Shown one piece after another: positions 8,319-63,500 of a DNA stretch of 64,000 nucleotides. Both the position numbers and the translations under genes were made by a program. Position 1 is the stretch's first letter; each line of letters begins with the position of its first letter. The stretch comes from Macrostomum lignano. Lineage: Eukaryota. The DNA lies in contig NIVC01001808.1 in the NCBI GenBank assembly GCA_002269645.1, positions 62,001-126,000 of the forward strand. Reading direction: 5' to 3'. The notes below the pieces were generated by a model. That model saw only the letters and a program-made list of their open reading frames with translations, did not search any database and was not told where the DNA came from.

Positions 8319-11249
8319 GACTGTCTGTCTGTCTGTCTGTCTCTATCTGTCTGTCGGTCGGTCGGTCAGTCTGAATGTCTGAGGTTCAATATTCTGGATG
8401 GCGCAGCTCTTTTCCGGCGCAGCTGATATGATTCATGCTCCATTCTCCCCCAGAAGGCAATAGCTGGCTAAGTGTCTGTTTAGCCGCATGCTAATTGAAG
8501 CATAGCGCCCACTCGCCTGCCCATGCAGGTGCTGCAAGAGTCCTCCCTCGTGGACGGCGCCACCATTGACCGGCCAGTGCTGAGCAGCTTCCAGTTCAGC
8601 GACGACGAATCCGTGCAGGCCGCAGTCCGCCTCGGGCCGCAGTCGCTTGTTGTCCGCCTGTCTGTCGACGGGAATCATTCGCGTCAATCCGTTGCCTTGA
8701 CAACCGCACCTCCGGTTGCTCAGCCGCCTGACGATGTCCAGCAGCAGCAGTTGGCGCCGCATCAGCACGTGACCGTGGGCCATCTGTCGCCTGGCGGCCA
8801 GCTTGTCGTCTGCGGCTCTCACGGCGGCCTCCTGGCGGCCAACAGCATCGGACTGCTGGATCTGGACCAACCGCCTTGGCAGCAAGCCGGAGCGGTGCAC
8901 GCTCACAGCGCCTCTATCGATTTCCTATTGCACACCGGCTGTGGCGACTCGTGCGGAGATAATCACGGTGGCGATGGCGCTGAAGGAGGCAGCGGCGGCG
9001 GCTTCTTGACATTCAGCCGGAAGCAACAGTGCTTGCGAGCTTGGCAGCCGGGAGAAGCGCAGGCGTTGAGCCAGGCCGACTATAGGTAACAGTTAGCCGA
9101 TATGTATAGAAAACAGCTTTCTTAATAATGGTATAATTTCACACAGTTTAGCAATCAAAAATTGTTCATTTGATCCGATATGTATCGAAATATTCAGGTT
9201 TGTATACATTGCGGGTGTGGATAGTTCCAAAGGATATTCAATCGTTACATGTCGGTATATTCAATAATGAGCCGATATCTATCGGAAATCATTGATTTCG
9301 TGTTCCAGACGCCTGCTACCGTGCGTGCACGCCACAGCTTACTGCTTGGACTCGGAGCGGCGCCGGGTTCTCCTGTGCACCGGCGCCTGTCTCACTTTGC
9401 TGCCGCTGAGCCCAGGCCAGTCCGATCCGCAGGCCGGCGTGACTCGGCCTGAGCTGCTCCGTCTGACTGCAGCCTCGGATGACCCTACGTCATCGTCTGG
9501 AGGCGCCGACGATGAGCCGCCCGGCGATGGTCCTAAGTTCGACTCTGTCGACAGGCTGCGGCTGCTGCAGGCCGACCAGTACGCCGTGATGTCGGATGCT
9601 GAGTGGCTCTACGTATTGGAGATGGACAGCAAGCGGCTGGTGCAGCGGGTGGCTAAGCCGTTGCTGTGGGAGAAATTTCCCACAGATTCGGATCAAGCGG
9701 AAGCTATTGTGGCCGTTTTCAAGAAGCAGGTCTGCGCTGGTTCACTTTTGGGATCAAGTTTTTGAGGATCTTTGCGAGTTTAGGGATTTTTAAGTAGGGT
9801 TCTCGTGTTTCGGAATCCCGATTGTGGGGTTCTCATGTTTGGGGGTCATAGTTGTGGGGTTCTCATGTTTGGAGGTCATAGTTGTGGGGTTCTCATGTTT
9901 GGGGGTCATAGTTGTGGAGTTCTCATGCTTGGGGATCATAGTTGTGGGGTTCTCATGTTTGGGGGTCCCGTTTGTAGGATTCTCATGTTTGGGATTTCTG
10001 GTTGTGGGATTCTCACGTTTGGGATCACAGTTGTGGCCGGTGGGATTCTCATGTTTGGGAGTCCTGGTTGTGGGGTTCTCATGTTTTGGAATTTCGGTTG
10101 CGGGGTTCTCATGTTTCGGAGTTCCGGTTATAGGGTTCTTATATTTGGGAATTCCGGCTGTGGGGTTTTTTTACGCAATTATGATTCTGGTATTCATAAA
10201 AAGTGGGACGTCACATTCTTACTATTTGACCGTTCGGTGGCAAACAACAGCTAGTATGGTCACGTGAAAGACCATTTATTTAACGGTCACATCACGGTCA
10301 CATTTGACAGTCACAGTGTGACATTTTCGGCGGTCACCAAAAAACTTCCACTTATACTGGATGTACAATATTTACATATAATAGAGTTGATATTTAATTA
10401 TCACAGCATTATAAAGATTTCACACTTGCCCTCCTTTGGCCAGGTGAAGTCGGACAAATACCTGCAAGTGTCTCTACTCTCGGTGCCAAATCTGACTCCA
10501 ATGCGAACAAAGACATGCCTGCCGCCGTTGATCGGCGGCGGCGGCGGTCAGCGGCGCTGGCAGCTCACCGGCCTGAGAACCAGCGACAGCGGAGACACCT
10601 GCGTACTGGAGTACACGGTTGGCGGCACAGCCGGCGTCTCCGCCGACGCTAGCGAAAGCTCACCGGCGGCGTCGGCCACCAAGCACCTGTTCGCCGTGAA
10701 TTTCGCCTCGCCCGGCACCGAGCTGGTGGCCTGCGTTGCCTCGGACGCCGCCGCCGCAGGCGGATTGGGCGGCAGGCGCCGGACTGTGGCCAGCCTGGAC
10801 TCGAATCTGCCCGTGTACTCGCTGACCCATTGGAGTCGCGAGGCATTCCTAGTTGGCAGCGTCGGCGACTGCCAGCTTTGGGACGTCACGGCCGGGGCCT
10901 GTCGGCTGCCCCGGATGCCCTACTTTCACACCTGGCTGAAGCATTCCACGTCGGTTAATGTTAACAGGCGGCAGGCCAAGGATCAGTTGGTGAAGTTTGA
11001 GTTCCTGCCAATTACAGCTATGGCTGTGAATGCAGACAGGACTAAGGTTTGATATTGCTCTGTTGCTTTGGATTGTCTTTAAAATATACGGAGATCCGTG
11101 CCTTCATGTGGTGCGGCTTGTACTAATGGACAGATCACACTATGAAAAATGATAAAGACGCTGACATAAAATAAATTATAAATTTCGATAAAAATAGATT
11201 AGACTTTGAGATGGCGGACAGACGTACAGACAGACAGGCTGGCAGACAT

Positions 11250-11288
<39 letters not shown>

Positions 11289-11362
11289 GGCTGGCTGGCA
11301 GACATACAGACAGACAGACAGGTAAGCAAACAGACAGACATGCTGGCTGGCTGACAGGCAGG

Positions 11363-11424
<62 letters not shown>

Positions 11425-12092
11425 GGCTGACTGGCAGACATACAGACAGACAGACAGGTAGACAAACAAACAGACAGACAGACACGCAGACAAACAGTCC
11501 AGACACGCAGACAGATACCAAAGCAGGCAATACAAATCAAGCACTCAACTTCGAATTCGCCCCATACCGTCAGGTGGCCACAGGCTGCGCCGCCGGGCAC
11601 ACCCTGGTGTGGGACTGGGCCCTCATCCAATCTCTGGGCGGCGCCGAGCCGGACGAACCGACGGCCCGTCGAATTCGCGTTCGAATGCGCGCCCGACACG
11701 ACGGTCAAGTGGCCGCCCTGGCCATCGCCGAGGTGCCCGCCGGCGCCTCAACCGTCAAGTCGAATGCGATCGGCGACGTCGACAACAGCGTCGGTAGCGG
11801 CGGCCTGTTGGCTAGCGCCGGCGGCGAAGACCTGACGGTGGTGCTGCACTGCCTGACCAGCGGCCGCTGCCTGCACCGGGTGACCGTTCACCTGGCGCTG
11901 ACCGAATTAGCCTTCGCCTCCGGCAATTCTCTTATCGGCTTCTCGGCTCCGACCTCCGACAGTGCTGGCGGCAGGCGGCTGATGTACTTTAGCGTGGCCA
12001 ACTGGCTGGTCCCGGACTTTGATGCTGCTGCCTCTGCTGCTGCTACTCCTCGGACTCAACAGCAACAGCAATCAGCAGAGCCAGCGGTTTGA
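412..12092 (+). CDS. NACHT-domain + WD40-like repeat protein (NWD1/NWD2-like STAND NTPase), 5' end outside window, 11 exons
   Basis: Exons 412-893, 1237-1468, 2810-3229, 4054-4399, 5087-5423, 6316-6934, 7605-8098 (alternative acceptor 7611), 8529-9085, 9309-9729, 10444-11046, 11574-12092. All junctions are GT-AG with matching phase, giving ~1675 aa to TGA at 12090-12092. Motifs: P-loop APSGHGKT, '[10 protein letters not shown]', Walker B '[10 protein letters not shown]', '[23 protein letters not shown]...VRVPPLLW.R', then WD-like segments ([25 protein letters not shown]). Confidence 0.9.
2090..2720. repeat. Degenerate ~15-bp minisatellite (intronic)
   Basis: AATCCCAATAACAGG / AATCCCAATACCAGG units. 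Confidence 0.9.
3253..3590. repeat. (CTGT)n microsatellite (intronic)
   Basis: Directly visible; a second short tract lies at ~3885-3948. Confidence 0.95.
4436..5012. repeat. 42/45-bp minisatellite (intronic)
   Basis: Unit TCTCAATTCTCAACCCATTCTGAGTTCTCAGGGTTTGAGAGA. Confidence 0.95.
5525..6092. repeat. 31-bp minisatellite (intronic)
   Basis: Unit GCGCCGCAGGTGAGGTTTTAGCGCCATTTAA. Confidence 0.95.
7093..7556. repeat. 21-bp minisatellite (intronic)
   Basis: Unit GTTGCTATGCCCTCCAGGCCA. Confidence 0.95.
8112..8372. repeat. (CTGT)n microsatellite (intronic)
   Basis: Starts ~13 nt after the donor at 8099. Confidence 0.95.
9820..10165. repeat. 30-bp degenerate minisatellite (intronic)
   Basis: Unit GTTGTGGGGTTCTCATGTTTGGGGGTCATA. 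Confidence 0.9.
11216..11515. repeat. (GACA)n microsatellite (intronic)
   Basis: Directly visible, imperfect. Confidence 0.95.
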
Positions 12093-40046: not shown

Positions 40047-46239
<6,193 letters not shown>

Positions 46240-46714
46240 GGCGGGAGGGAGGCAAAGGAAAAGAATGGCTCGCTGGCTCACACTGCCAGAGTGTAGCTGG
46301 GGTTCTTATCACTGCGCTGCTTAGGGAAACCCGAGGAGCTGGTTGGCTGTGGAGCGCTCGGCCTGATCGATATTGTCCGATCGACAGCCAACACCCCCCC
46401 CCCAGGTCTGATCTGTATGTCTGTTCTATGCCAGCACAGTATTGAATAAATTAATAATAGATATATTCAAACTATATGTCCTGAAGGCATATTCTGCGTT
46501 TAAAATCCAAGCCTGCTAGATCTGCCAGTTACAGCTGGGTTGTCTTTATGGGATTATAATCCCACTCAAGTGGGTTGGGAGAGTGGGAGATTCTAAAACG
46601 AGATCAGCGATTTCGACTACTCCGAGAGGAGCTTATCCACAGAAATTTTTGTTAACAAATTGCTGATTTCATCATTTCCTTTTGTCTGTCTTGACTCCTG
46701 GTCCTCTCTTCACC

Positions 46715-47840
46715 TCTCTCTTCCCAGTATCTCCCTCTCTTTCCCAGTATCTCCCTCTCTTTCCCAGTATCTCCCTCTCTTTCCCAGTATCTCCCTCTCT
46801 TTCCCAGTATCTCCCCTCTCTTCCCCAGTATCTCCCCTCTCTTTCCCAGTATCTCCCTCTCTTTCCCAGTATCTCCCTCTCTTTCCCAGTATCTCCCTCT
46901 CTTTCCCAGTATCTCCCTCTCTTTCCCAGTATCTCCCTCTCTTTCCCAGTATCTCCCTCTCTTCCCCAGTATCTCCCTCTCTTTCCCAGTATCTCCCCTC
47001 TCTTCCCCAGTATCTCCCTCTCTTTCCCAGTATCTCCCTCTCTTTCCCAGTATCTCCCTCTCTTTCCCAGTATCTCCCTCTCTTTCCCAGTATCTCCCTC
47101 TCTTTCCCAGTATCTCCCTCTCTTTCCCAGTATCTCCCTCTCTTCTCCAGTATCTCCCTCTCTTTTCCAGTATCTCCCTCTCTTTCCCAGTATCTCCCTC
47201 TCTTCTCCAGTATCTCCCTCTCTTTCCCAGTATCTCCCTCTCTTTCCCAGTATCTCCCTCTCTTTCCCAGTATCTCCCTCTCTTTCCCAGTATCTCCCTC
47301 TCTTTCCCAGTATCTCCCTCTCTTTCCCAGTATCTCCCTCTCTTTCCCAGTATCTCCCTCTCTTTCCCAGTATCTCCCTCTCTTTCCCAGTATCTCCCTC
47401 TCTTCCCCAGTATCTTCCCTCTCTTCCCCAGTATCTCCCTCTCTTTCCCAGTATCTCCCTCTCTTTCCCAGTATCTCCCTCTCTTTCCCAGTATCTCCCT
47501 CTCTTTCCCAGTATCTCCCTCTCTTTCCCAGTATCTCCCTCTCTTTCCCAGTATCTCCCTCTCTTTCCCAGTATCTCCCTCTCTTTCCCAGTATCTCCCT
47601 CTCTTTCCCAGTATCTCTCCTCTCTTCCCCAGTATCTCCCTCTCTTTCCCAGTATCTCCCCTCTCTTCCCCAGCATCTCTCTCTCTTCCTCAGTATCTCC
47701 CTCTCTTTCCCAGTATCTCCCTCTCTTTCCCAGTATCTCCCTCTCTTTCCCAGTATCTCTCCTCTCTTCCCCAGCATCCCCTCTCTTCCCCAGCATCCCA
47801 CTCTCTCTTCCCCCAGTATATATCTCTCTTCTCCAGTGTC
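46715..47840. repeat. 20-bp pyrimidine-rich minisatellite
   Basis: Unit TCTTTCCCAGTATCTCCCTC. Confidence 0.97.
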
Positions 47841-48894
47841 TCCCATTTCTTGGCAATCAACAGACAGAAAGCTCTTTCAGGCAATTTGTTTTCAATTTCT
47901 GCGCATCTGGATGCAGGAAATTCAAGCGGACGGGATCAGCAGAAGCGGCAAGTGAATGAAATTTCATGCCAGCGGTTCCTCTCCAGCCTTGCTCCCGAAA
48001 AAACCTCAAGCAAAAAAAGCTCTTCAAAAATGTAAATTATATTTTTTTGACTTGGCAAGAAAAAAAATCCAGTCCGATGGGAACTGCGCCCTTGCAGCCA
48101 GTCGCATTCCACAGAAAATGAAATTTCTTCCCTTCTCGCTTTACGCTTTTTATTTTGTCTTCTTTCATGCCAACAGAGCATATTCTGTATAAAAAGCCCT
48201 GTTTTTCGATTTAATTGTCAAAAGCTAAGATTTCTACTGGTAGTAAGCTTTGCGCATCTTTGCTTGTTTCAAATTAGGGAATTAATAAATTGTTTATTAA
48301 TGGAAGAAATACAGTCTGATCTGCCAACTTCGTCTGGACTGCTATTTGGGACATTTTAGATCAGCAGTTGATTTTAGACATAAGGGCATTATACATAAAT
48401 AGATTTTAGTAGATGTCGATTAAGGGGGGATTTGGTTGTCCAAGGGGGTGGACTATTGTTATTTACCTTAGATGAGCAGTTGTAGGTATTGCATTGGGGT
48501 ATTTGATTTTAGATATAAGAGCATTACGTATAAACAGGTTTTAGTAGATGTTGATCTAAGGGGGGTTTGAAGCAGGCTGTCCCAGAACTCCCCCAAGGCC
48601 TACCACTCACCAGGCATAGAGACAAGAGGAAAATTGCATACTTTACAAGTGTCCGTGAAATATGCGAGATTACTACTATATTTTATACTTTTACCTCAGG
48701 GCCGTCTCAGTCAACAGCAGCTGTCAACAGACAAAAATCTGTTTTATGAGACTAAAGAAAATTTGCATGATTGATAAATCGACGTTAAGGTCGACGTTTA
48801 TAGCAACTGTAGCTTCATGCTAATAATATTTCCACGAGACATCAAATAAAAAATGTTCCAATGTGTTTTTTAACAAATTTGTTATTTTACATGT

Positions 48895-48896
<2 letters not shown>

Positions 48897-48950
<54 letters not shown>
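48897..48950. repeat. (CT)n microsatellite upstream of the profilin-domain gene
   Basis: Directly visible. Confidence 0.95.
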
Positions 48951-48952
<2 letters not shown>

Positions 48953-49345
48953 CTCCTGCACCTTCGCCCGTCCCTCGCTCTGACTAGAGTGATCCCAGTT
49001 CGATATTTCGCATGTTGCACTCAGCGGGGGGTGAGGAAGGGCAGACAGTCGAGCTCCCAATGCGCACACAGGGAGCGCTCACTTTGTCCAATTTTCCAAG
49101 GCGAGCGCTGCGTCGCCAACCCCTGGAGCTCCGGGCTCACTGGATCGATTTGTAAGGCACAAATGTCAATAGACTGGGGCGCTAGCAGGAAGTTAAGTGC
49201 GCTGAGTAGACCCCCCCCCCCACACGTATTTATTCCACCTTGGCTGTTTATTTCCCTTTGCTCCAGAACATTCCAGTCACCAAGCCAGTTAGTAGTCTCT
49301 GCCGCCCCAGCCAGAAAGCCCCGGTCTGAATTCGATAGCGCTGAC

Positions 49346-52300
49346 ATGGCCGAAGCATCCGCGCCAGAGGACAGAGAAACTCGAAACAGCGGGAGCCGGG
49401 GCGGTTTCCGGTTCTTCTGGAAAAAGAAAAAATCTTCAAGCAGCGACGGCGAGACATCCCCAAGCGACGCCAAGCGAACAGGATGCGGTGGCCTCTTCAG
49501 GCGCAAAACTAGGAGCAAGGCGAAGTCGCCGGTAGGCTGCCGTTTCATGCTACTATTAGTAGATCTTGCCTCAGACCCCTGGTTCGATTCCGCCCGTACA
49601 CAGCCAGTCACATTCATTTGGGCCTTCGTACAGTATTGCCGCAACTCTCTCGCAAGCCTTATGCGGATATTTATATTTTAATAAAGACTTTGTTTCAATT
49701 AGGCTACAAGTATTTCTAACGGCTGATCCTCCACAATGTTCAACAACAAGACAGCTCGCTTGTTTGGACCATGTTGAGTTACCTGGGGTGGACTTACCGT
49801 ACCATCGGGAACCCTAGCGCAGGCATGAGTTATACCGTTTTGTTTCAGCAACTCGAGCAGAGATGGCTTTGGGGAAGCACTGTGCTGGATCCATGCATCC
49901 ATGCATCCATGTACAGCCTGAGTTTGACCAGTTCAATCGCGTTCTAAACCAACCGATACTGCAATGAAAAGAACTCCAAATGAGCAAAACCACCAATCAA
50001 TTGAGAACTATGAGTAGGTGAAATCACTCGTGCGCTTTTTCACTTAGCTGCAGGGGCTCCGTGCATCCGGAAACAGCGAGGAGGCGTTGCCGCCCATTTT
50101 GCTAACCCCTGGCGACCACGGGCAGCTGGTGCTGCGGTGTCGCGCAGGGAGTTCCGGTGGCGCCGGTGTCCGCAGCGCGGTCCCCCTCCAGAGAGTCTAA
50201 GAGGTGGATTGTCGCTCGCCCGGTAGGTAGCGGACGAGCTGGCGGAGATTCTCGGGCCTGAAAACGTCGGAGGGGTCCGGGTTTGGGCCGAGGTAGATGA
50301 GCCTGTCCTGAGTAAAGGCGGGGCATTCACAGATGAAGTGCTCCGCATTCTCGACACCGGAGAGGCAGAATGGGCATTCCTCACTCCGGATTTTTCCCTG
50401 CCTGGAGGTGACGATGCCTGGCAAAGCAGCCATGACCCGAGAGGGCCATGGTCACCGCCCTGATGTCCCTGCGGTTGAGTCCAAGCAGAGCCCTGCGCAG
50501 GGCGGAGGAAGGACAGGGGAGCCGTGCGGGATTGCCGGCAGTCGGGGGGGGGGGGTTAGCCCACCTCTCCCTGTGCTTAGAAGCCACCCACTGGTTGATC
50601 CGAGTGGTGACAAATCACTCGTACACAGTAATGGACGAAAAATAATGACACATGAGGCTTCGAGTTTCGAGTCTTAGATTGTAGAAAAAGTACGATTCTA
50701 CACCCAGTATTACATTTAGTATGTGATGAAGCGTTAACTCGTTTTATTGTCCTGATACCTGCTTTATAAAGCAGGAACAGCAGGAGCAGAAACCGGAGGT
50801 GTCAGCCAACCACAGCAACGCCCATCGGTCGCAGTCTCAGCCGCCGCCGCCGCCACCAACAGCAAGCCAGACGGTGCAGATCACATTCGACGATGTTGAA
50901 CTGCCAGACGTCTGTCACGGCAACGCCGATAGCGACGGAGGCAGCGTGCACTCGGTCTGCGAGGAGGTGGTCTGCGTGAAGGTCAAGGACGTCGAATCGG
51001 CCTGGGTTCGGCCGCCTGTGTCCGCTCCGGCCAAGGACGCCAAGCCGCGTTTGTCCCTGGCGAAGATGGCCAGCAAGGACGCGCCGGGGCCGGCGGCGGA
51101 TGGCCAGTCCAGCCGGCAGTCGGACGCCGGGATGTCCGCTGAAGCTACCGCAGCTGTAGAAGCCGCCATCGCTGCCGCGGCCAACGACGCCGAAGCTGAG
51201 GCGGAGCGGCAGCGGATTGCGGAGGCCAGATTTCAGCGAAAATCGGTTGACATGCGAAACGTCAAGGCTACGGGTGGCGTGAAGGTTTGTCGCTGTTATC
51301 ATTCGCGCTCAAATAGTTTTAAATGAGTAGCCCAGTGCTTAGTTTATGTATGGTACTCGTACCGGTAGACTGTCAAGACACACTGTGCACTAAACTGTAT
51401 GACATGGCCCAGGGACTATCAGGACACACTGTGCACTAAACTGTATGACATGGCCCAGGGACTATCAGGACACACTGTGCACTAAACTGTATGACATGGC
51501 CCAGGGACTATCAGGACACACTGTGCACTAAACTGTATGACATGGCCCAGGGACTATCAGGACACACTGTGCACTAAACTGTATGACATGGCCCAGGGAC
51601 TATCAGGACACACTGTGCACTAAACTGTATGACATGGCCCAGGGACTATCAGGACACACTGTGCACTAAACTGTATGACATGGCCCAGGGACTATCAGGA
51701 CACACTGTGCACTAAACTGTATGACATGGCCCAGAAACTATCAGGACACACTGTGCACTAAACTGTATGACATGGCCCAGGGACTATCAGGACACACTGT
51801 GCACTAAACTGTATGACATGGCCCAGGGACTATCAGGACACACTGTGCACTAAACTGTATGACATGGCCCAGAAACTATCAGGACATACTGTGCACTAAA
51901 CTGTATGACATGGCCCAGGGACTATCAGGACACACTGTGCACTATACTGTATGACATGGCCCGGGGATAATCAGGACACACTGTGCACTAAACTGTATGA
52001 CATGGCCCAGGGACTATCAGGACACACTGTGCACTAAACTGTATGACATGGCCCAGGGACTATCAGGACACACTGTGCACTAAACTGTATGACATGGCCC
52101 AGAAACTATCAGGACACACTGTGCACTAAACTGTATGACATGGCCCAGGGACTATCAGGACACACTGTGCACTAAACTGTATGACATGGCCCAGGGACTA
52201 TCAGGACACACTGTGCACTAAACTGTATGACATGGCCCAGGGACTATCAGGACACACTGTGCACTAAACTGTATGACATGGCCCAGGGACTATCAGGACA

Positions 52301-52904
52301 CTGTGCACTATACTGTATGACATGGCCCGGGGATAATCAGGACACTGTGTATCTAGATACTATACTATGGCATGATCAGGACACACTTATCCACCTTTGA
52401 CAAGGGACTCCAGACGCACTGACGTTGACTCACTGGAGACAAAACAAAAAGTGACTGCATGGAGCCAAAAACGAACCCTATCACCCGCAGATCGAGCAGA
52501 CACCGCAGTCGGATATGTGGTGGAACATCGTGAATAAAAGCCTGGTTGGCACCGGCCTGTTCAGCCGGGCAGTCGTGTGCAGCCTGACCACTGGCGGCGT
52601 GTTCGCCTGCAATCCGGCCGATTTCGCGCCAGCCGCCGAGCAAGTGGCCCTCCTGAGGCAAAATTTTCACAATCCGGGCGCTTTCTCGGCCGCCGGATTC
52701 GCTGTCGGCGGCATTCTGTACAAGGTCGAGCCCGAAGCTTGCACCAAAGAGCTGCTGTCTGGAGTGAACCTGCAGCACACGGAGGGCTTACTGATAGTGA
52801 AGTCTCGAACCGCGCTGATTGCCGCCGGATACACCGGAGGTCGCGGCCAGGCGCAGGAGACTCTGGGGGATCTGCGGGACCTGTTCGTGCAGCAGGGACT
52901 CTGA
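49346..52904 (+). CDS. Profilin-domain protein with ~240-aa N-terminal extension, 3 coding exons
   Basis: Exons 49346-49531, 50775-51284, 52491-52904, all phase 0 with GT-AG, giving 369 aa. The last 129 aa ([31 protein letters not shown]...GFAVGGILY...[15 protein letters not shown]...[13 protein letters not shown]) match the profilin pattern. The upstream exons have GC-rich coding-like composition. Profilin call ~0.9; fusion ~0.7. Confidence 0.75.
50032..50611 (-). mobile_element. 5'-truncated non-LTR retrotransposon (LINE) 3' fragment in intron of the profilin-domain gene
   Basis: Minus-strand translation '[28 protein letters not shown]-(frameshift)[22 protein letters not shown]' matches the C-terminal CCHC knuckle region of LINE ORF2. 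The 11-mer AAATCACTCGT flanks both sides (50021-50031, 50612-50622). Confidence 0.8.
51375..52350. repeat. 46-bp minisatellite (intronic)
   Basis: Unit GGACACACTGTGCACTAAACTGTATGACATGGCCCAGGGACTATCA. Confidence 0.97.
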
Positions 52905-53002
52905 GCGGGAGCTGACGCCTTTTGACTGCCAGATATGAATTGTACTAAAGTTGCTGTCTGTTGACTGTGCGAATGTTGACTGCATTTTGCCACTTGTGTG
53001 CT

Positions 53003-53855
53003 GTTCTGTGACTTCTACGATGTGATTTGTGCTGTTCTGTGACTTCTACGATGTGATTTGTGCTGTTCTGTGACTTCTACGATGTGATTTGTGCTGTTCT
53101 GTGACTTCTACGATGTGATTTGTGCTGTTCTGTGACTTCTACGATGTGATTTGCTCTGTTCTGTGACTTCTACGATGTGATTTGCTCTGTTCTGTGACTT
53201 CTACGATGTGATTTGCTCTGTTCTGTGACTTCTACGATGTGATTTGTGCTGTTCTGTGACTTCTACGATGTGATTTGTGCTGTTCTGTGACTTCTACGAT
53301 GTGATTTGTGCTGTTCTGTGACTTCTACGATGTGATTTTTGCTGTTCTGTGACTTCTACGATGTGATTTGTGCTGTTCTGTGACTTCTACGATGTGATTT
53401 GTGCTGTTCTGTGACTTCTACGATGTGATTTGTGCTGTTCTGTGACTTCTACGATGTGATTTTTGCTGTTCTGTGACTTCTACGATGTGATTTGTGCTGT
53501 TCTGTGACTTCTATGATGTGATTTGTGCTGTTCTGTGACTTCTACGATGTGATTTGTGCTGTTCTGTGACTTCTACGATGTGATTTGTGCTGTTCTGTAA
53601 CTTCTACGATGTGATTTTTGCTGTTCTGTGACTTCTACGATGTGATTTGTGCTGTTCTGTGACTTCTATGATGTGATTTGTGCTGTTCTGTGACTTCTAC
53701 GATGTGATTTGTGCTGTTCTGTGACTTCTATGATGTGATTTGTGCTGTTCTGTGACTTCCAAATTGTTATGTGCTGTTCTGTGACATCTAAATTGTGTTG
53801 TGTGCTGTTCTGTGACATCTAAATTGTGTTGTGTGCTGTTCTGTGACTTCTACAT
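53003..53855. repeat. 31-bp minisatellite
   Basis: Unit GTGCTGTTCTGTGACTTCTACGATGTGATTT. Confidence 0.97.
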
Positions 53856-54475: not shown

Positions 54476-54924
54476 CCTAGGAGTGAAACCCTGCAGTCCT
54501 GGCTTTATAGCACGGGTCCTAGGAGTGAAACCCTGCAGTCCTGGCTTTATAGCACGGGTCCTAGGAGTGAAACCCTGCAGTCCTGGCTTTATAGCACGGG
54601 TCCTAGGAGTGAAACCCTGCAGTCCTGGCTTTATAGCACGAGTCCTATGAGTGAAACCCTGCAGTCCTGGCTTTATAGCACGAGTCCTAGGAGTGAAACC
54701 CTGCAGTCCTGGCTTTATAGCACGAGTCCTAGGAGTGAAACCCTGCAGTCCTGGCTTTATAGCACGAGTCCTAGGAGTGAAACCCTGCAGTCCTGGCTTT
54801 ATAGCACGAGTCCTAGGAGTGAAACCCTGCAGTCCTGGCTTTATAGCACGAGTCCTAGGAGTGAAACCCTGCAGTCCTGGCTTTATAGCACGGGTCCTAG
54901 GAGTGAAACCCTGCAGTCCTGGCT
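54476..54924. repeat. 42-bp minisatellite
   Basis: Unit CCTAGGAGTGAAACCCTGCAGTCCTGGCTTTATAGCACGAGT. Confidence 0.97.
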
Positions 54925-60515: not shown

Positions 60516-63500
60516 CTAACACAAAACATGCAGCAGCGTAATCTTCACCGACCCGTCATTGACGCCTGCTTTGGTGTTGCCGCCGGTGATGCCGGAGCAG
60601 CCGCTGCCGCCGCAGTAGGAGCCGCCGCCACCTCCCGCCATATATCTGACCCGCCCGGCTCCGCCGCCGCTGAAGCCACCGCCGCCGCCGCTGGCTCCGT
60701 AGAAGCCGCCGCCGCCGCCGCCACCAAAGCCGCCCTTGTAGTCGTATCCGGCCCCCGCCTCACCGCCGGCCCAGTTGTTCGCAAGGCCGTTGCCGCGATC
60801 TCCGTCATAGTAGCCGCGCCGCGCCTTGTTGGGCCTGCCGAGCCAGCCAGCGCCGGAGCCGCCGTGGTGCTCACCCGATGGCACCGCGTTCGTCTTCGTG
60901 AATCCCGGCTGGCCGTTCGAGCCGCCGAAGCCTTTGTAGGTCGAGTCCGGCTTTGAGTTCGTTCCGCTGGTGCCCGCCTGGCCGTCCACGCCTGCAGTTG
61001 GGAGACAGGCTTGAGATTGATGCATTGACGCAAATGCCCTCGGTCCCCTCAGATTTGGCGCCGATGCCCTTAGTCCCTTCAGATTTGGCGCCATTGCCCT
61101 TAGTCCCTTTAGATTTGGCGCCGTTGCCCTTAGTCCCTTTAGATTTGGCGCCGTTGCCCTTAGTCCCTTTAGATTTGGCGCCATTGCCCTTAGTCCCTTC
61201 AGATTTGGCGCCATTGCCCTTAGTCCCTTCAGATTTGGCGCCGTTGCCCTTAGTCCCTTTAGATTTGGCGCCGTTGCCCTTAGTCCCTTTAGATTTGGCG
61301 CCATTGCCCTTAGTCCCTTCAGATTTGGCGCCATTGCCCTTAGTCCCTTCAGATTTGGCGCCATTGCCCTTAGTCCCTTCAAATTTGGCGCCGATACCCT
61401 TAGTCCCTTTAGATTTGGCGCCGTTGCCCTTAGTCCCTTCAAATTTGGCGCCGATGCCCTTAGTCCCTTCAAATTTGGCGCCGATACCCTCAGATTTGGC
61501 GCAAATGCCCTCAGTCCCTCAGATTTGGCGCCGATACCCTCAGATTTGGCGCAAATGCCCTCAGTCCCTCAGATTTGGCGCCGATACCCTCAGATTTGGC
61601 GCAAATGCCCTCAGTCCCTCAGATTTGGCGCCGATACCCTCAGATTTGGCGCAAATGCCCTCAGTCCCTCAGATTTGGCGCCGATACCCTCAGATTTGGC
61701 GCCGATACCCTCAGATTTGGCGCAAATGCCCTCAGTCCCTCAGATTTGGCGCAAATGCCCTCAATCCCTCAGATTTTGCGCAAATGCCCTCAATCCCTCA
61801 GATTTGGCGCCGATGGCACTCAGATTTGGCGCCATTACCTATCAGTCCATTAAAAGTCCCGCTGCTTCCCTTCAGCTGCTCAGATCCAAACACACTCTGG
61901 TTTCTAAGAGTTAGCACTGATTACTCCCCAGTTTCGATAAATCCCCTCGAGCCCCCTCAGTCCCACAGAACTGGTATCAGTCGATCCATTCCCCGAACCA
62001 GCAGACCAAACAACACCAAATCCTACAGTCCCTCGGGGCTAAATAGATGTTACCTTTATGGTCTTTGCCGGCCCCTCCGCCACCTCCAGCAGCCAGCAGC
62101 AGGGTGTTGTCGGCGTCCTTGTAGACAAAGCTGCCCCCGCCGCCGCCAGCGCTGCCATGCGACAGCGTTTGTGACGTTATGTAGCCGCCTCTCTTCCCGA
62201 CAACAACAGACAGAACTGTGCCGGCCGTCAGCCTGAAATTGCCGCTCATTTTGGCGCCGTTGCCTCCACTTCTAGCGAACACTTTGCCGCCATCGGCACC
62301 CAGTGCCTCGATCCGGTAGCAGGCGGTGAACGGCAGCTGCACCGTCTGAACCGAACCGGTGCGTACGGAGCTCGTAGCTGAAGCTGAGAGACATTTCTTA
62401 TTAAAAAAACAATTTAGAGGATTCAGACAGAGTTGAGTCATAGGGGTCATAGAGGGAATTAGGTCACAGCCGGAATTGAGTCATAGACGGAATCGGGTTA
62501 TCGATAGAATCGGGTCATAGGCGTAATTGAATAATACATGTAGACGGAACTGGGTCTAGACAGATTCGGTTCATAGACGGAATTGGGTCATAGATAATAA
62601 CGGGTCATGGATAGAATTGGGTCATAGATAGAATCTGGTCATAGATAAAACCGGGTCATAGACAAAGTTGAATCATAGACGGATTTGAGTCATAGATGGA
62701 ATCCGGTTATACGAGCTATATAGAATCAAGTCATCAATGGAATCAGGTCATAGATAAAATCGGTCATAGACGGAACCGGGTCATGGACAGATTCAGTTCA
62801 TTGACGGAATTGGGTCATAGATAAAACCGGGTCAAGGATTGAATTGGGTCATACGTAGATAGAATCGGGTCATAGATGGAGTCGGGTCATAGATGGAATC
62901 GGGTCATAGATGGAATCGGGTCATAGATGGAGTCGGGTCATAGATGGAATCGGGTCATAGATGGAGTCGGGTCATAGATGGAATCGGGTCTTAGATGGAG
63001 TCGGGTCATAGATGGAATCGGGTCATAGATGGAATCGGGTTATATATAGAATCAGGTCATAGATGGAATCGGGTCATAGATGGAGTCGGGTCATAGATAG
63101 AATCGGGTCATAGATGGAATCGGGTTATATATAGAATCAGGTCATAGATGGAATCGGGTCATAGATGGAGTCGGGTCATAGACAGAACTAGGCCATGAAC
63201 GAAATTGAGTCATAGACGGAATTTGTCATTGACGGAATTGGGGTCATAGATAGAATCGGGTCATTGACGGAGTTGGGTCACAGACGGAATCAGGCCAATG
63301 ATAGAATTAGGGCAATATGATCGGGGCCAAACCATTGGGCCAGAGAAAGAACCGAACGATCACAATCCTTCCGGCTACTCACCAGAAAAAGTCTTCTCAA
63401 ACGGCGGCAGCAGGGCGGCCAGCCGCAGCTCCAAGTCGGCCACTTTCCACAGCCGATCGGACGGTCCGGCCTCAACGTGTCGCCGCACGCGGCTCGGGTT

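What the first reader, a model, noticed from the sequence alone, without database searches (positions are those of the whole stretch)
49346..52904. Profilin fused to a long N-terminal extension: a possible membrane-tethered multidomain profilin
Seen: three phase-0 exons join in frame, and the profilin Met lies only 8 codons after an acceptor (CCCGCAG at 52490). The ~240-aa extension has an aromatic/polybasic patch ([24 protein letters not shown]), a hexaproline run, a beta-rich acidic segment, and an Ala/Glu helix ending [20 protein letters not shown]. Established: profilins are normally ~125-140-aa single-domain proteins that bind actin, polyproline and phosphoinositides. Inference: the basic patch targets membranes, and the helix plus MRNV may act like a WH2 actin-binding motif. 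An upstream in-frame ATG at 49060 (via intron 49152-49266) could extend it further.
Basis: partly seen in the sequence, partly recalled or inferred. Interest (0 to 1): 0.7.

Follow-up and report, generated by a model that had tools for sequence, protein, structure and literature searches.

The report
Flatworm profilin-like protein with disordered basic tail
This is a real, already annotated but unstudied gene of the flatworm Macrostomum lignano: a divergent profilin-fold domain preceded by a long disordered extension with conserved basic, aromatic and cysteine motifs, one of an undescribed family found in flatworms and a ribbon worm that may hold a profilin-like module at membranes.

Summary
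The three-exon fusion is real. The window is Macrostomum lignano. GenBank protein PAA63872.1 (Mlig019530.g1, "hypothetical protein, partial") has the same model, except that exon 2 starts at 50772 rather than 50775 (tandem AAG|CAG| acceptor, one extra Gln). Two homeologous copies and a second paralogue group share the layout of three phase-0 exons.

The C-terminal 140 residues form a confident profilin fold. The 230-residue extension is predicted disordered apart from one helix.

The extension is not peculiar to this species. Extended profilin-like proteins occur in at least six trematodes, a nemertean and unnamed transcripts. A conserved segment just before the domain spans the window's exon 2/3 junction, and the "profilin Met" is not conserved, so the domain is unlikely to be made alone.

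The basic/aromatic/Cys motifs recur across the family. Two relatives instead begin MGNKSSS (a myristoylation consensus) followed by a MARCKS-like KKRFSFRK patch. This supports the membrane-tether idea, which remains untested.

Not supported:
- the WH2 reading
- the hexaproline run and the "beta-rich" segment (neither is conserved, and both lie in the part predicted disordered)
- the upstream ATG at 49060

The polyproline-binding and actin-binding residues of canonical profilins are largely replaced.

Moderately interesting: a new variant of a known kind.

The parts
49346..49531 (+). Coding exon 1 (62 codons, start ATG 49346, donor GT at 49532). It encodes the disordered N-terminus with two basic/aromatic motifs.
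   Evidence: The start codon is supported by MAEA/MANA N-termini of the complete paralogues and of the foreign transcript.
49394..49444 (+). Motif 1, residues 17-33, [17 protein letters not shown]: an acid-free basic/aromatic cluster.
   Evidence: Counterparts elsewhere are GGIRQRIRSLLKRK (paralogue B), KKSGFLSAFMNIFRTKKK, KKTGKFGRFLSHFKRK (Heterobilharzia) and KGKLYGLKKRFSFRKHK. Only 16 of 2000 shuffles of the extension reach the observed clustering.
49469..49525 (+). Motif 2, residues 42-60, [19 protein letters not shown]: a Cys-Gly plus hydrophobic plus polybasic motif, a candidate S-acylation and electrostatic membrane anchor.
   Evidence: GCGGLFRRK is identical in paralogue B and in P0004. 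Similar motifs are FGCTGLCAGRRRR (Calicophoron), FSCGALRSR (Dicrocoelium) and FFTCGLCSRG (P0019).
49532..50771 (+). Intron 1 (GT..AG). It contains a frameshifted fragment on the minus strand (about 50190-50560) that looks like the end of a non-LTR retrotransposon ORF.
   Evidence: The intron is 97.8% identical to that of the homeologue L002.
50772..51284 (+). Coding exon 2 (171 codons; alternative in-frame acceptor at 50775). It is a low-complexity spacer that ends in a helix and a conserved motif. The equivalent exon of the paralogue is a cassette exon.
   Evidence: Purifying selection: 6 synonymous against 2 non-synonymous differences. P0011 skips the equivalent exon although locus L004 retains it.
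51138..51242 (+). Predicted long alpha-helix, residues 185-219 (Ala/Glu-rich).
   Evidence: AlphaFold2 secondary structure; mean pLDDT of the 10-residue blocks that cover it (residues 181-220) is 73-85.
51219..51263 (+).
   Evidence: Paralogue B has AERQFQQASVDMADV at the same place. There is no WH2 or thymosin Pfam hit.
51285..52490 (+). Intron 2 (GT..AG), mostly a 46-bp tandem repeat (51368-52345, 21 copies).
   Evidence: The repeat is also present in L002.
52491..52904 (+). Coding exon 3: the end of the conserved pre-domain segment (IEQTPQSD), the profilin-fold domain, and the stop codon TGA at 52902-52904.
   Evidence: Pfam Profilin 46.9 bits. AlphaFold2 pLDDT is 90 or more from about residue 231. 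Foldseek match to S. pombe profilin 3d9y: target-normalised TM-score 0.88, rmsd 1.9 A.
51273..52514 (+). Conserved pre-domain segment GGVK|IEQTPQSD (residues 230-241), which is split by intron 2.
   Evidence: The pattern G-x-V-x-h-[ED]-x-[TS]...h-W is conserved in trematode and other family members and partly in the nemertean sequence. It is ordered in the model.

Best explanation
Shown:
- The locus is one three-exon gene of Macrostomum lignano (Mlig019530.g1). It encodes a protein of about 370 residues.
- Residues of about 230-370 form a profilin fold. Residues 1-229 form an extension that is predicted disordered apart from one long helix.
- The gene belongs to a conserved, uncharacterised family of N-terminally extended, divergent profilin-like proteins. 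The family is found in flatworms (Macrostomum and at least six trematodes) and a nemertean.
- In M. lignano the family has expanded to at least two annotated paralogue groups, each with several homeologous copies, plus an unannotated tandem copy.
- The middle exon is a variable spacer, and in the paralogue it is an alternatively skipped cassette.

Inferred:
- The conserved acid-free basic/aromatic motifs in exon 1 ([11 protein letters not shown]; [15 protein letters not shown]) act like a MARCKS-type effector region. They would bind acidic membranes electrostatically and hydrophobically, helped by S-acylation of Cys47, and could be released by Ser/Thr phosphorylation or calmodulin. This would place the profilin-like module at a membrane.
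- The canonical polyproline-binding and actin-binding residues are largely replaced. The module therefore probably binds a different or modified ligand, as mammalian profilin-4 does, rather than acting as a classical actin-monomer shuttle.
For: Gene model:
- GenBank proteins P0007, P0001 and P0006 have the same structure.
- Splice sites and phases are identical in L002 and in the paralogue loci L003 and L004.
- The extension exons are under purifying selection.
- A 934-nt intron-free contig from another species (L001/P0004) is 74% identical to, and collinear with, the short isoform P0011. It joins exon-1-like sequence directly to the profilin-like sequence.

Family:
- A search of 1.84 billion representative proteins gave 24 hits. 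Many have the domain starting at residue 60-160.
- Named members come from Heterobilharzia, Calicophoron, Dicrocoelium, Opisthorchis, Paragonimus, Schistosoma haematobium and Tubulanus.
- The conserved pre-domain segment spans the window's exon 2/3 junction. The 'profilin Met' is Ile, Val or Leu in most members.

Fold.

Membrane motifs:
- Motifs recur at equivalent positions in the extensions.
- They are clustered beyond shuffles in 7 of 10 extensions.
- P0039 and P0041 begin MGNKSSS, and for P0041 an in-frame stop lies upstream of that ATG. Both also carry KKRFSFRK- or KKRLSIRK-type patches.

Divergent ligand sites:
- Tyr6 is Ile, or Val in one, in all 18 members; Trp31 is never Trp; Arg74 is never basic.
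- The residues that define these sites are taken from PMC2694148.
Against: - There is no experimental or RNA-seq evidence in hand for this locus.
- The window protein itself has no N-myristoylation consensus (it begins MAEAS).
- Basic clusters could equally be nuclear localisation signals or calmodulin sites.
- Three extended members (Tubulanus, P0029, P0021) have acidic or neutral extensions without such motifs.
- The alignment to canonical profilins is uncertain in the loops, so loss of actin binding is not proven. The family profile still resembles Acanthamoeba profilin strongly (E = 3e-16).
Confidence: 0.55

Rival explanations
1. The extension is a regulatory or localisation tail of another kind. 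The basic clusters would be nuclear localisation signals or calmodulin-binding or nucleic-acid-binding sites, and the protein would not be membrane-associated.
For: KKKK and RRKTRSKAK resemble classical nuclear localisation signals, and basic amphipathic segments are typical calmodulin targets (sequence). The window protein has no lipidation consensus at its N-terminus.
Against: A Cys-Gly is conserved next to hydrophobic and basic residues in six of nine motif-2 counterparts. Aromatic residues sit inside the basic clusters. Relatives carry a myristoylation consensus plus a MARCKS-like patch. Calmodulin binding would also be compatible with a MARCKS-type switch, so it does not exclude membrane binding.
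Confidence: 0.2
2. The helix plus [11 protein letters not shown] acts as a WH2-like second actin-binding element that cooperates with the profilin domain, as the inserted helix of Leishmania profilin does.
For: A confident helix (residues 185-219) precedes a motif conserved between paralogues. PMC10907219 gives a precedent for a profilin with a WH2-like helix that lacks LKKV.
Against: There is no Pfam WH2 or thymosin match. The LKKV-equivalent is MRNV here and MADV in the paralogue, which is not basic. The whole exon is skipped in P0011 and absent from P0004 and from the trematode members. The main actin-binding residues of the domain are not conserved.
Confidence: 0.1
3. The main product is profilin alone. 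Exon 3 would be spliced-leader trans-spliced at 52491, or translation would start at Met 52515. The M. lignano leader ends in ATG and would be in frame. The fused form would be a minor isoform.
For: About 30% of M. lignano genes are trans-spliced, and the 35-nt leader ends in ATG (PMC8629364). The acceptor at 52490 is phase 0.
Against: All six annotated copies join the exons. The pre-domain segment that crosses the junction is conserved across phyla. The internal Met is Ile in paralogue B and Val or Leu elsewhere. Exon 2 is under purifying selection. No gene call with the 129-residue product is on record. CCGCAG does not match the [T/C]TNCAG motif enriched at trans-splice acceptors.
Confidence: 0.07
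4. The upstream exons belong to another gene, or the model is an annotation artefact.
For: Old UniProt fragments of this locus carry unrelated names, TIM22 and N-acetyltransferase.
Against: Those entries are frameshifted or merged versions of the same exons. The nearest upstream ORF (44257-46281) is on the opposite strand. Exon-1 motifs are linked to the profilin-like domain on single transcripts in other species.
Confidence: 0.02

Closest known systems
Canonical profilins (Pfam PF00235; e.g. Acanthamoeba profilin I 1ACF, S. pombe profilin 3D9Y)
   Same: The fold is the same (target-normalised TM-score 0.88, rmsd 1.9 A). The family profile aligns full-length with Acanthamoeba profilin (E = 3e-16, 30% identity). 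Trp3 and the LVGTG and TP..Q motifs are retained.
   Different: The protein has 370 residues rather than 125-140, with a 230-residue disordered N-terminal extension leaving from the N-terminal helix, which is part of the polyproline-binding face. Tyr6 is Ile, Trp31 is Phe, His/Tyr133 is Leu, and Arg74 is not basic.
Mammalian profilin-4 (PFN4)
   Same: It is a divergent animal profilin that lacks the polyproline-binding and actin-binding residues. Experimentally it binds phosphoinositides but not actin or poly-L-proline (PMC2694148).
   Different: PFN4 is a 129-residue single domain with no extension. The family is more similar to protist-type profilin than to PFN4, so orthology is not shown.
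Leishmania/Trypanosoma profilin with a WH2-like helical insertion
   Same: It is a profilin carrying an extra helix that adds a second contact with its ligand (PMC10907219).
   Different: There the helix is a 20-residue insertion before the C-terminal helix and is shown to bind actin. Here the helix lies in an alternatively spliced N-terminal spacer, has no shown function, and is absent from most family members.
MARCKS / MARCKS-like effector domain (myristoyl-electrostatic switch)
   Same: Both have an acid-free cluster of Lys/Arg, Phe and Ser in a disordered protein. Relatives P0041 and P0039 combine MGNKSSS with KKRFSFRK, which is very close to the KRFSFKK core of MARCKS. The comparison with MARCKS rests on my own knowledge; the family sequences are.
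   Different: No sequence homology to MARCKS was detected (no Pfam hit). The window protein lacks an N-terminal Gly2. Membrane binding is untested.
FhProfilin of Fasciola hepatica and other 130-residue trematode profilins
   Same: They are flatworm profilins. This shows that trematodes also keep a canonical profilin that binds actin and polyproline (PMC7727368).
   Different: FhProfilin has 130 residues, no extension and a conserved proline-binding site. The extended family is a separate paralogue.

Membership tests
Profilin (PF00235) | Profile HMM score above the curated threshold | tested here: met
   46.9 bits against a cut-off of 25, residues 242-368, profile positions 3-126 of 127.
Profilin (PF00235) | Profilin fold: a central antiparallel sheet flanked by N- and C-terminal helices | tested here: met
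   AlphaFold2 pLDDT is 90-97 over residues 231-370. The top 49 of the 50 PDB Foldseek matches shown are profilins or profilin-like proteins, and the 50th is a chimera that contains profilin. The best is 3d9y, target-normalised TM-score 0.88, rmsd 1.9 A.
Profilin (PF00235) | Aromatic poly-L-proline site (Trp3, Tyr6, Trp31, His/Tyr133, Tyr/Phe139) | tested here: not met
   The window protein has W, I, F, L, L at these positions. Tyr6 is Ile, or Val in one, in all 18 family members. The residue list is from PMC2694148.
Profilin (PF00235) | Key actin-contact residues (Tyr/Phe59, Arg74, Arg88, Lys90, His119, Lys125, Tyr128) | tested here: inconclusive
   The Arg74 equivalent is Pro here and never basic in the family. 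The positions of Arg88, Lys90 and His119 fall in loops that align poorly.
Profilin (PF00235) | Binds G-actin, polyproline and phosphoinositides | not testable with these tools
   This needs biochemistry.
WH2 domain / beta-thymosin | Match to the WH2 (PF02205) or thymosin (PF01290) profile | tested here: not met
   No hit was listed at E up to 10 for the extension alone or at E up to 1 for the whole protein. HMMER's filters may drop very weak hits.
WH2 domain / beta-thymosin | L-[KR]-[KR]-[VT] motif after an amphipathic helix | tested here: not met
   The equivalent is MRNV here and MADV in paralogue B. The helix itself is predicted.
MARCKS-type myristoyl-electrostatic switch (functional class) | Acid-free cluster of basic, aromatic and Ser residues in a disordered region | tested here: met
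   Residues 13-33, and a similar segment at 42-60. Only 16 of 2000 shuffles reach the observed clustering. The region is disordered in the model.
MARCKS-type myristoyl-electrostatic switch (functional class) | N-terminal Met-Gly-x-x-x-Ser/Thr myristoylation consensus | tested here: not met
   The window protein starts MAEAS. The consensus is met only in relatives P0039 and P0041 (MGNKSSS), with an in-frame stop upstream in L005.
MARCKS-type myristoyl-electrostatic switch (functional class) | Reversible binding to acidic membranes | not testable with these tools
   This needs liposome binding and localisation experiments.
Profilin-4 orthologue | Closer to PFN4 than to other profilins | tested here: not met
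   hhalign E = 1.9e-9 to PFN4 (sequence from memory) against 3e-16 to Acanthamoeba profilin.
Spliced-leader trans-spliced gene | Leader-containing reads at a 5' acceptor | not testable with these tools
   No read data are available. The only relevant facts are the leader sequence and the acceptor motif from PMC8629364.

The most novel reading that the evidence does not exclude
Flatworms, nemerteans and possibly other spiralians possess a distinct class of lipid-anchored profilin-fold proteins, in effect a MARCKS/profilin hybrid. The disordered N-terminus would be a myristoyl- or palmitoyl-electrostatic switch. The profilin-like module has lost classical polyproline and actin binding, and would couple membrane signals (PKC, calmodulin, phosphoinositides) to a new ligand. 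The alternatively spliced spacer, with its conserved FQxxSVDM motif, would tune reach or autoinhibition.
Probability: 0.25. Interest if true: 0.6.

Novelty: new variant of a known kind. Interest (0 to 1): 0.42.

Why it matters
Profilins are textbook single-domain proteins. A conserved clade with a long N-terminal tail that looks lipid-anchored, and with remodelled ligand sites, would be a second animal example after profilin-4 of the fold being reused for something other than actin-monomer shuttling. It would also show one way to localise such a module.

The family is present in parasitic flukes but was not found outside spiralian animals in these searches. It may therefore be a lineage-specific piece of cell biology.

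M. lignano has transgenesis and RNAi, so the hypothesis can be tested directly. For genome annotation, the result shows that 'profilin' entries of 200-400 residues in flatworms are not model errors.

Tried and rejected
- The third homologue search, run with the 20-sequence family alignment, returned almost nothing new. The candidate cap was probably consumed by low-complexity words.
- The look-up of the 129-residue profilin-only product found no record. This is only weak negative evidence.
- A search for the six Mlig gene identifiers in the literature found nothing.
- Searches for lipidated or N-terminally extended profilins found no description of this family. FhProfilin turned out to be a canonical 130-residue protein.
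- Human PFN1 could not be aligned to the family profile by hhalign. Site mapping therefore relies on a MAFFT alignment anchored by the Acanthamoeba and fungal profilins.
- Hexaproline as a self-ligand for the profilin groove: rejected, because the run is absent from the paralogues and the groove aromatics are not conserved.
- A folded beta domain in residues 95-145: rejected, because pLDDT is below 50 and the segment is absent from paralogue B.
- The upstream ATG at 49060: rejected.
- The names TIM22 and N-acetyltransferase on UniProt fragments as evidence for another gene: rejected.
Full report
**What is in the sequence**

They join into an open frame of 369 codons that ends at TGA 52902-52904. 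Residues 242-368 match Pfam Profilin at 46.9 bits, against a cut-off of 25. By sequence they also match Acanthamoeba, S. pombe and yeast profilins in the PDB.

**Organism and existing annotation**

A homologue search identified the window as Macrostomum lignano, a free-living flatworm. Three GenBank proteins have the same fused architecture at 98-100% identity:
- PAA63872.1 (Mlig019530.g1)
- PAA62789.1 (Mlig010505.g1)
- PAA68126.1 (Mlig026365.g1)

All three are labelled "hypothetical protein, partial". UniProt calls an older model "Profilin".

PAA63872.1 maps onto the window exons and is the product of this locus. An older UniProt model (P0008) uses 50775, so both in-frame forms are in public annotations.

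The "partial" flag arises because the frame stays open upstream of the ATG. The complete paralogues and a foreign transcript all begin MAEA/MANA at the position of Met 49346.

**Is the fusion real?** Four lines of evidence say it is.

1. A homeologous locus (L002) is 95-98% identical through exons and introns and has identical splice sites. Between the two copies the extension exons carry 9 synonymous and 6 non-synonymous differences (binomial P = 0.003). Exon 2 alone carries 6 and 2 (P = 0.003). The extension is therefore translated in this frame and is constrained.

2. M. lignano has a second paralogue group, about 40% identical (P0009, P0010, P0011). It has the same three phase-0 exons, the same exon-1 motif GCGGLFRRK, a conserved motif at the end of exon 2 (AERQFQQASVDMADV against [15 protein letters not shown]) and the same junction (…VT|IEQGPHTE). 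P0011 skips the middle exon, although its locus L004 retains it. The middle exon is therefore a symmetric cassette in that paralogue.

3. A 934-nt intron-free contig from another species (L001, SRR28338164) encodes P0004. This protein is 74% identical to, and collinear with, P0011. It joins exon-1-like sequence directly to the profilin-like domain.

4. The nearest upstream ORF (44257-46281) lies on the opposite strand. Satellites fill the space in between.

I could not examine reads. The 129-residue profilin-only product is not on record. M. lignano trans-splices about 30% of its genes with a 35-nt leader that ends in ATG (PMC8629364). A short leader-initiated isoform from the phase-0 acceptor at 52491 therefore cannot be excluded, but nothing points to one.

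**A family, not a one-off**

A profile search of 1.84 billion representative proteins gave 24 hits. In many, the domain begins at residue 60-160 of a protein of 190-300 residues. The named members are all unnamed or hypothetical:
- trematodes: Heterobilharzia americana, Calicophoron daubneyi, Dicrocoelium dendriticum, Opisthorchis viverrini, Paragonimus heterotremus and Schistosoma haematobium
- a nemertean: Tubulanus polymorphus

The rest are transcript-like contigs of about 1 kb from metatranscriptomes and public sequencing-run assemblies.

All share hallmarks absent from canonical profilins: W-x-x-I-[VIL]-x-x-S, P-x-x-F-T-P-S-V-E-Q, and a conserved segment G-x-V-x-h-[ED]-x-[TS] immediately before the domain. 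In the window this segment is GGVK|IEQTPQSD and is split by intron 2. In the AlphaFold2 model it is ordered (pLDDT about 90 from residue 231). It is therefore not a conserved initiation site.

In loci L003 and L004 a further, unannotated tandem copy lies about 4 kb downstream. It has a different exon 1, an EKTP-repeat middle exon and a 95%-identical profilin exon.

**Structure**

AlphaFold2 was run with the 20-sequence family alignment:
- Residues 231-370 give pLDDT 90-97 with the profilin secondary-structure order.
- Residues 185-219 form a helix; the blocks covering it have mean pLDDT 73-85.
- Residues 1-180 have pLDDT mostly below 50.

Foldseek against the PDB returns profilins almost only. 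The best is S. pombe 3d9y, with target-normalised TM-score 0.88 and rmsd 1.9 A.

The protein is thus one folded domain plus a disordered tail, not a multidomain protein. The hexaproline run and the "beta-rich acidic" stretch fall in the disordered part and have no counterpart in paralogue B or other species.

**What the extension probably does**

Exon 1 carries two acid-free clusters of Lys/Arg with Phe/Trp/Leu and Ser: residues 13-33 (…[15 protein letters not shown]) and 42-60 (…[15 protein letters not shown]).

Equivalent clusters occur in 11 of 14 extended relatives. Examples are GGIRQRIRSLLKRK, KKSGFLSAFMNIFRTKKK and KKTGKFGRFLSHFKRK. The second cluster often has a Cys-Gly next to hydrophobic and basic residues, as in FGCTGLCAGRRRR, FSCGALRSR and FFTCGLCSRG. 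The clustering exceeds composition-preserving shuffles in 7 of 10 extensions; for the window, 16 of 2000 shuffles reach the observed value.

Two relatives, P0039 and P0041, begin MGNKSSS, and for P0041 an in-frame stop lies upstream of that ATG. Both continue with KGKLYGLKKRFSFRKHK or KKRLSIRKKK. From established knowledge, Met-Gly-x-x-x-Ser is the N-myristoylation consensus and KRFSFKK is the core of the MARCKS effector domain. That domain binds acidic membranes and is released by PKC phosphorylation or calmodulin.

My best explanation is therefore that the tail is a membrane tether of the acyl-plus-electrostatic kind, with Cys47 a candidate S-acylation site. This is inference. Nuclear localisation or pure calmodulin binding are the main alternatives, and the nemertean and two other members lack such motifs.

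**The "WH2-like" element**

No WH2 or thymosin profile hit was found. The LKKV-equivalent is MRNV here and MADV in the paralogue. The exon is skipped or absent in many members. A profilin with a WH2-like helix does exist in Leishmania (PMC10907219), but there it is an insertion within the domain. The FQxxSVDMxxV motif is conserved between paralogues and deserves a test, but I do not file it as WH2.

**Is the domain a working profilin?**

The residues that define the polyproline and actin sites are listed in PMC2694148. I verified my human PFN1 sequence against PDB 4x1l and aligned it, together with the Acanthamoeba and fungal profilins, to the family. The mapping gives:
- Trp3 is kept.
- Tyr6 is Ile, or Val in one, in all 18 family members.
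- Trp31 is Phe here and never Trp in the family.
- His/Tyr133 is Leu here.
- Tyr139 is Leu here.
- Arg74 is Pro here and never basic in the family.

The Arg88/Lys90 and His119 positions lie in loops that align poorly.

The family profile aligns best with protist-type profilin (hhalign E = 3e-16). Mammalian PFN4 is a precedent for a profilin fold that binds phosphoinositides but neither actin nor polyproline. Trematodes also keep a canonical 130-residue profilin that binds both (PMC7727368). I therefore infer a specialised, possibly non-canonical ligand, but loss of actin binding is not shown.

**Novelty and verdict**

The gene model is already public, so the bare observation is not new. I found no paper that describes N-terminally extended or lipid-anchored profilins in flatworms, or these gene identifiers. 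The library searched is limited to open-access papers.

What is new here:
- recognition of a conserved spiralian family
- its junction-spanning pre-domain segment
- the alternatively spliced spacer
- the lipid-anchor-like motifs in the tail

This makes it a new variant of a known kind and of moderate interest.

Noticed in passing
window 51368-52345: Intron 2 is mostly a 46-bp tandem repeat (21 copies, 96% matches). The array is also present in the homeologous locus L002.
   Followed up: partly
window 52997-53853, 54476-54924, 46660-47955 and 48897-48950: Further satellites flank the gene. Just downstream of the stop codon there is a 31-bp repeat of 27.7 copies, followed by a 42-bp repeat of 10.7 copies. 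Upstream there is a 20-bp repeat array: Tandem Repeats Finder, run only from 47000, reported 47000-47844 (42 copies), and repeat-derived ORFs start near 46660. A (TC)27 run lies about 400 bp before the start codon.
   Followed up: no
window about 40790-43120: A microsatellite-like array of about 2.3 kb is open in all six reading frames (DRQT/SVCL repeats). It produces artefactual ORFs of 700 residues and more.
   Followed up: no
window about 50190-50560, minus strand (inside intron 1): A frameshifted fragment whose translation ends in a Cys/His motif ([21 protein letters not shown]...), which resembles the C-terminus of a non-LTR retrotransposon ORF2. It has no Pfam hit. It is conserved in the intron of L002.
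   Followed up: partly
window 61977-62450 and 60516-61472, minus strand: An ORF with an ALK/LTK glycine-rich domain (PF12810, 36.6 bits). A neighbouring Gly-rich ORF with a decapeptide repeat is probably part of the same unrelated gene.
   Followed up: partly
window 44257-46281, minus strand: A long ORF whose N-terminus looks like a signal peptide followed by a Cys-containing domain, and which then runs into repeats. It has no Pfam hit. It is the nearest upstream neighbour and is transcribed divergently.
   Followed up: partly
L003 10921-12599 and L004 about 10135-11630: An unannotated third family member lies in tandem about 4 kb downstream of paralogue B. Its exon 1 is MTEQGRYS...GGGLRQRIRDLLLRR...LGFCGLLHRTKRR, its middle exon consists of EKTP repeats, and its profilin exon is 95% identical to that of its neighbour. 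This suggests gene conversion or a recent exon duplication.
   Followed up: partly
window 49208-49222: A poly-C tract just upstream of the start codon. The 5' ends of the three GenBank models differ there (RDPPH, PPPPH, PPH), which suggests that the tract length varies between copies. These models also begin at or near it, so it may lie close to the transcription start.
   Followed up: no
UniProt entries A0A1I8GM10 (P0003), P0012 and P0002; also P0018: Older models of this gene family in the first M. lignano assembly are frameshifted or merged. Two carry misleading names (TIM22 subunit, N-acetyltransferase domain-containing protein).
   Followed up: partly
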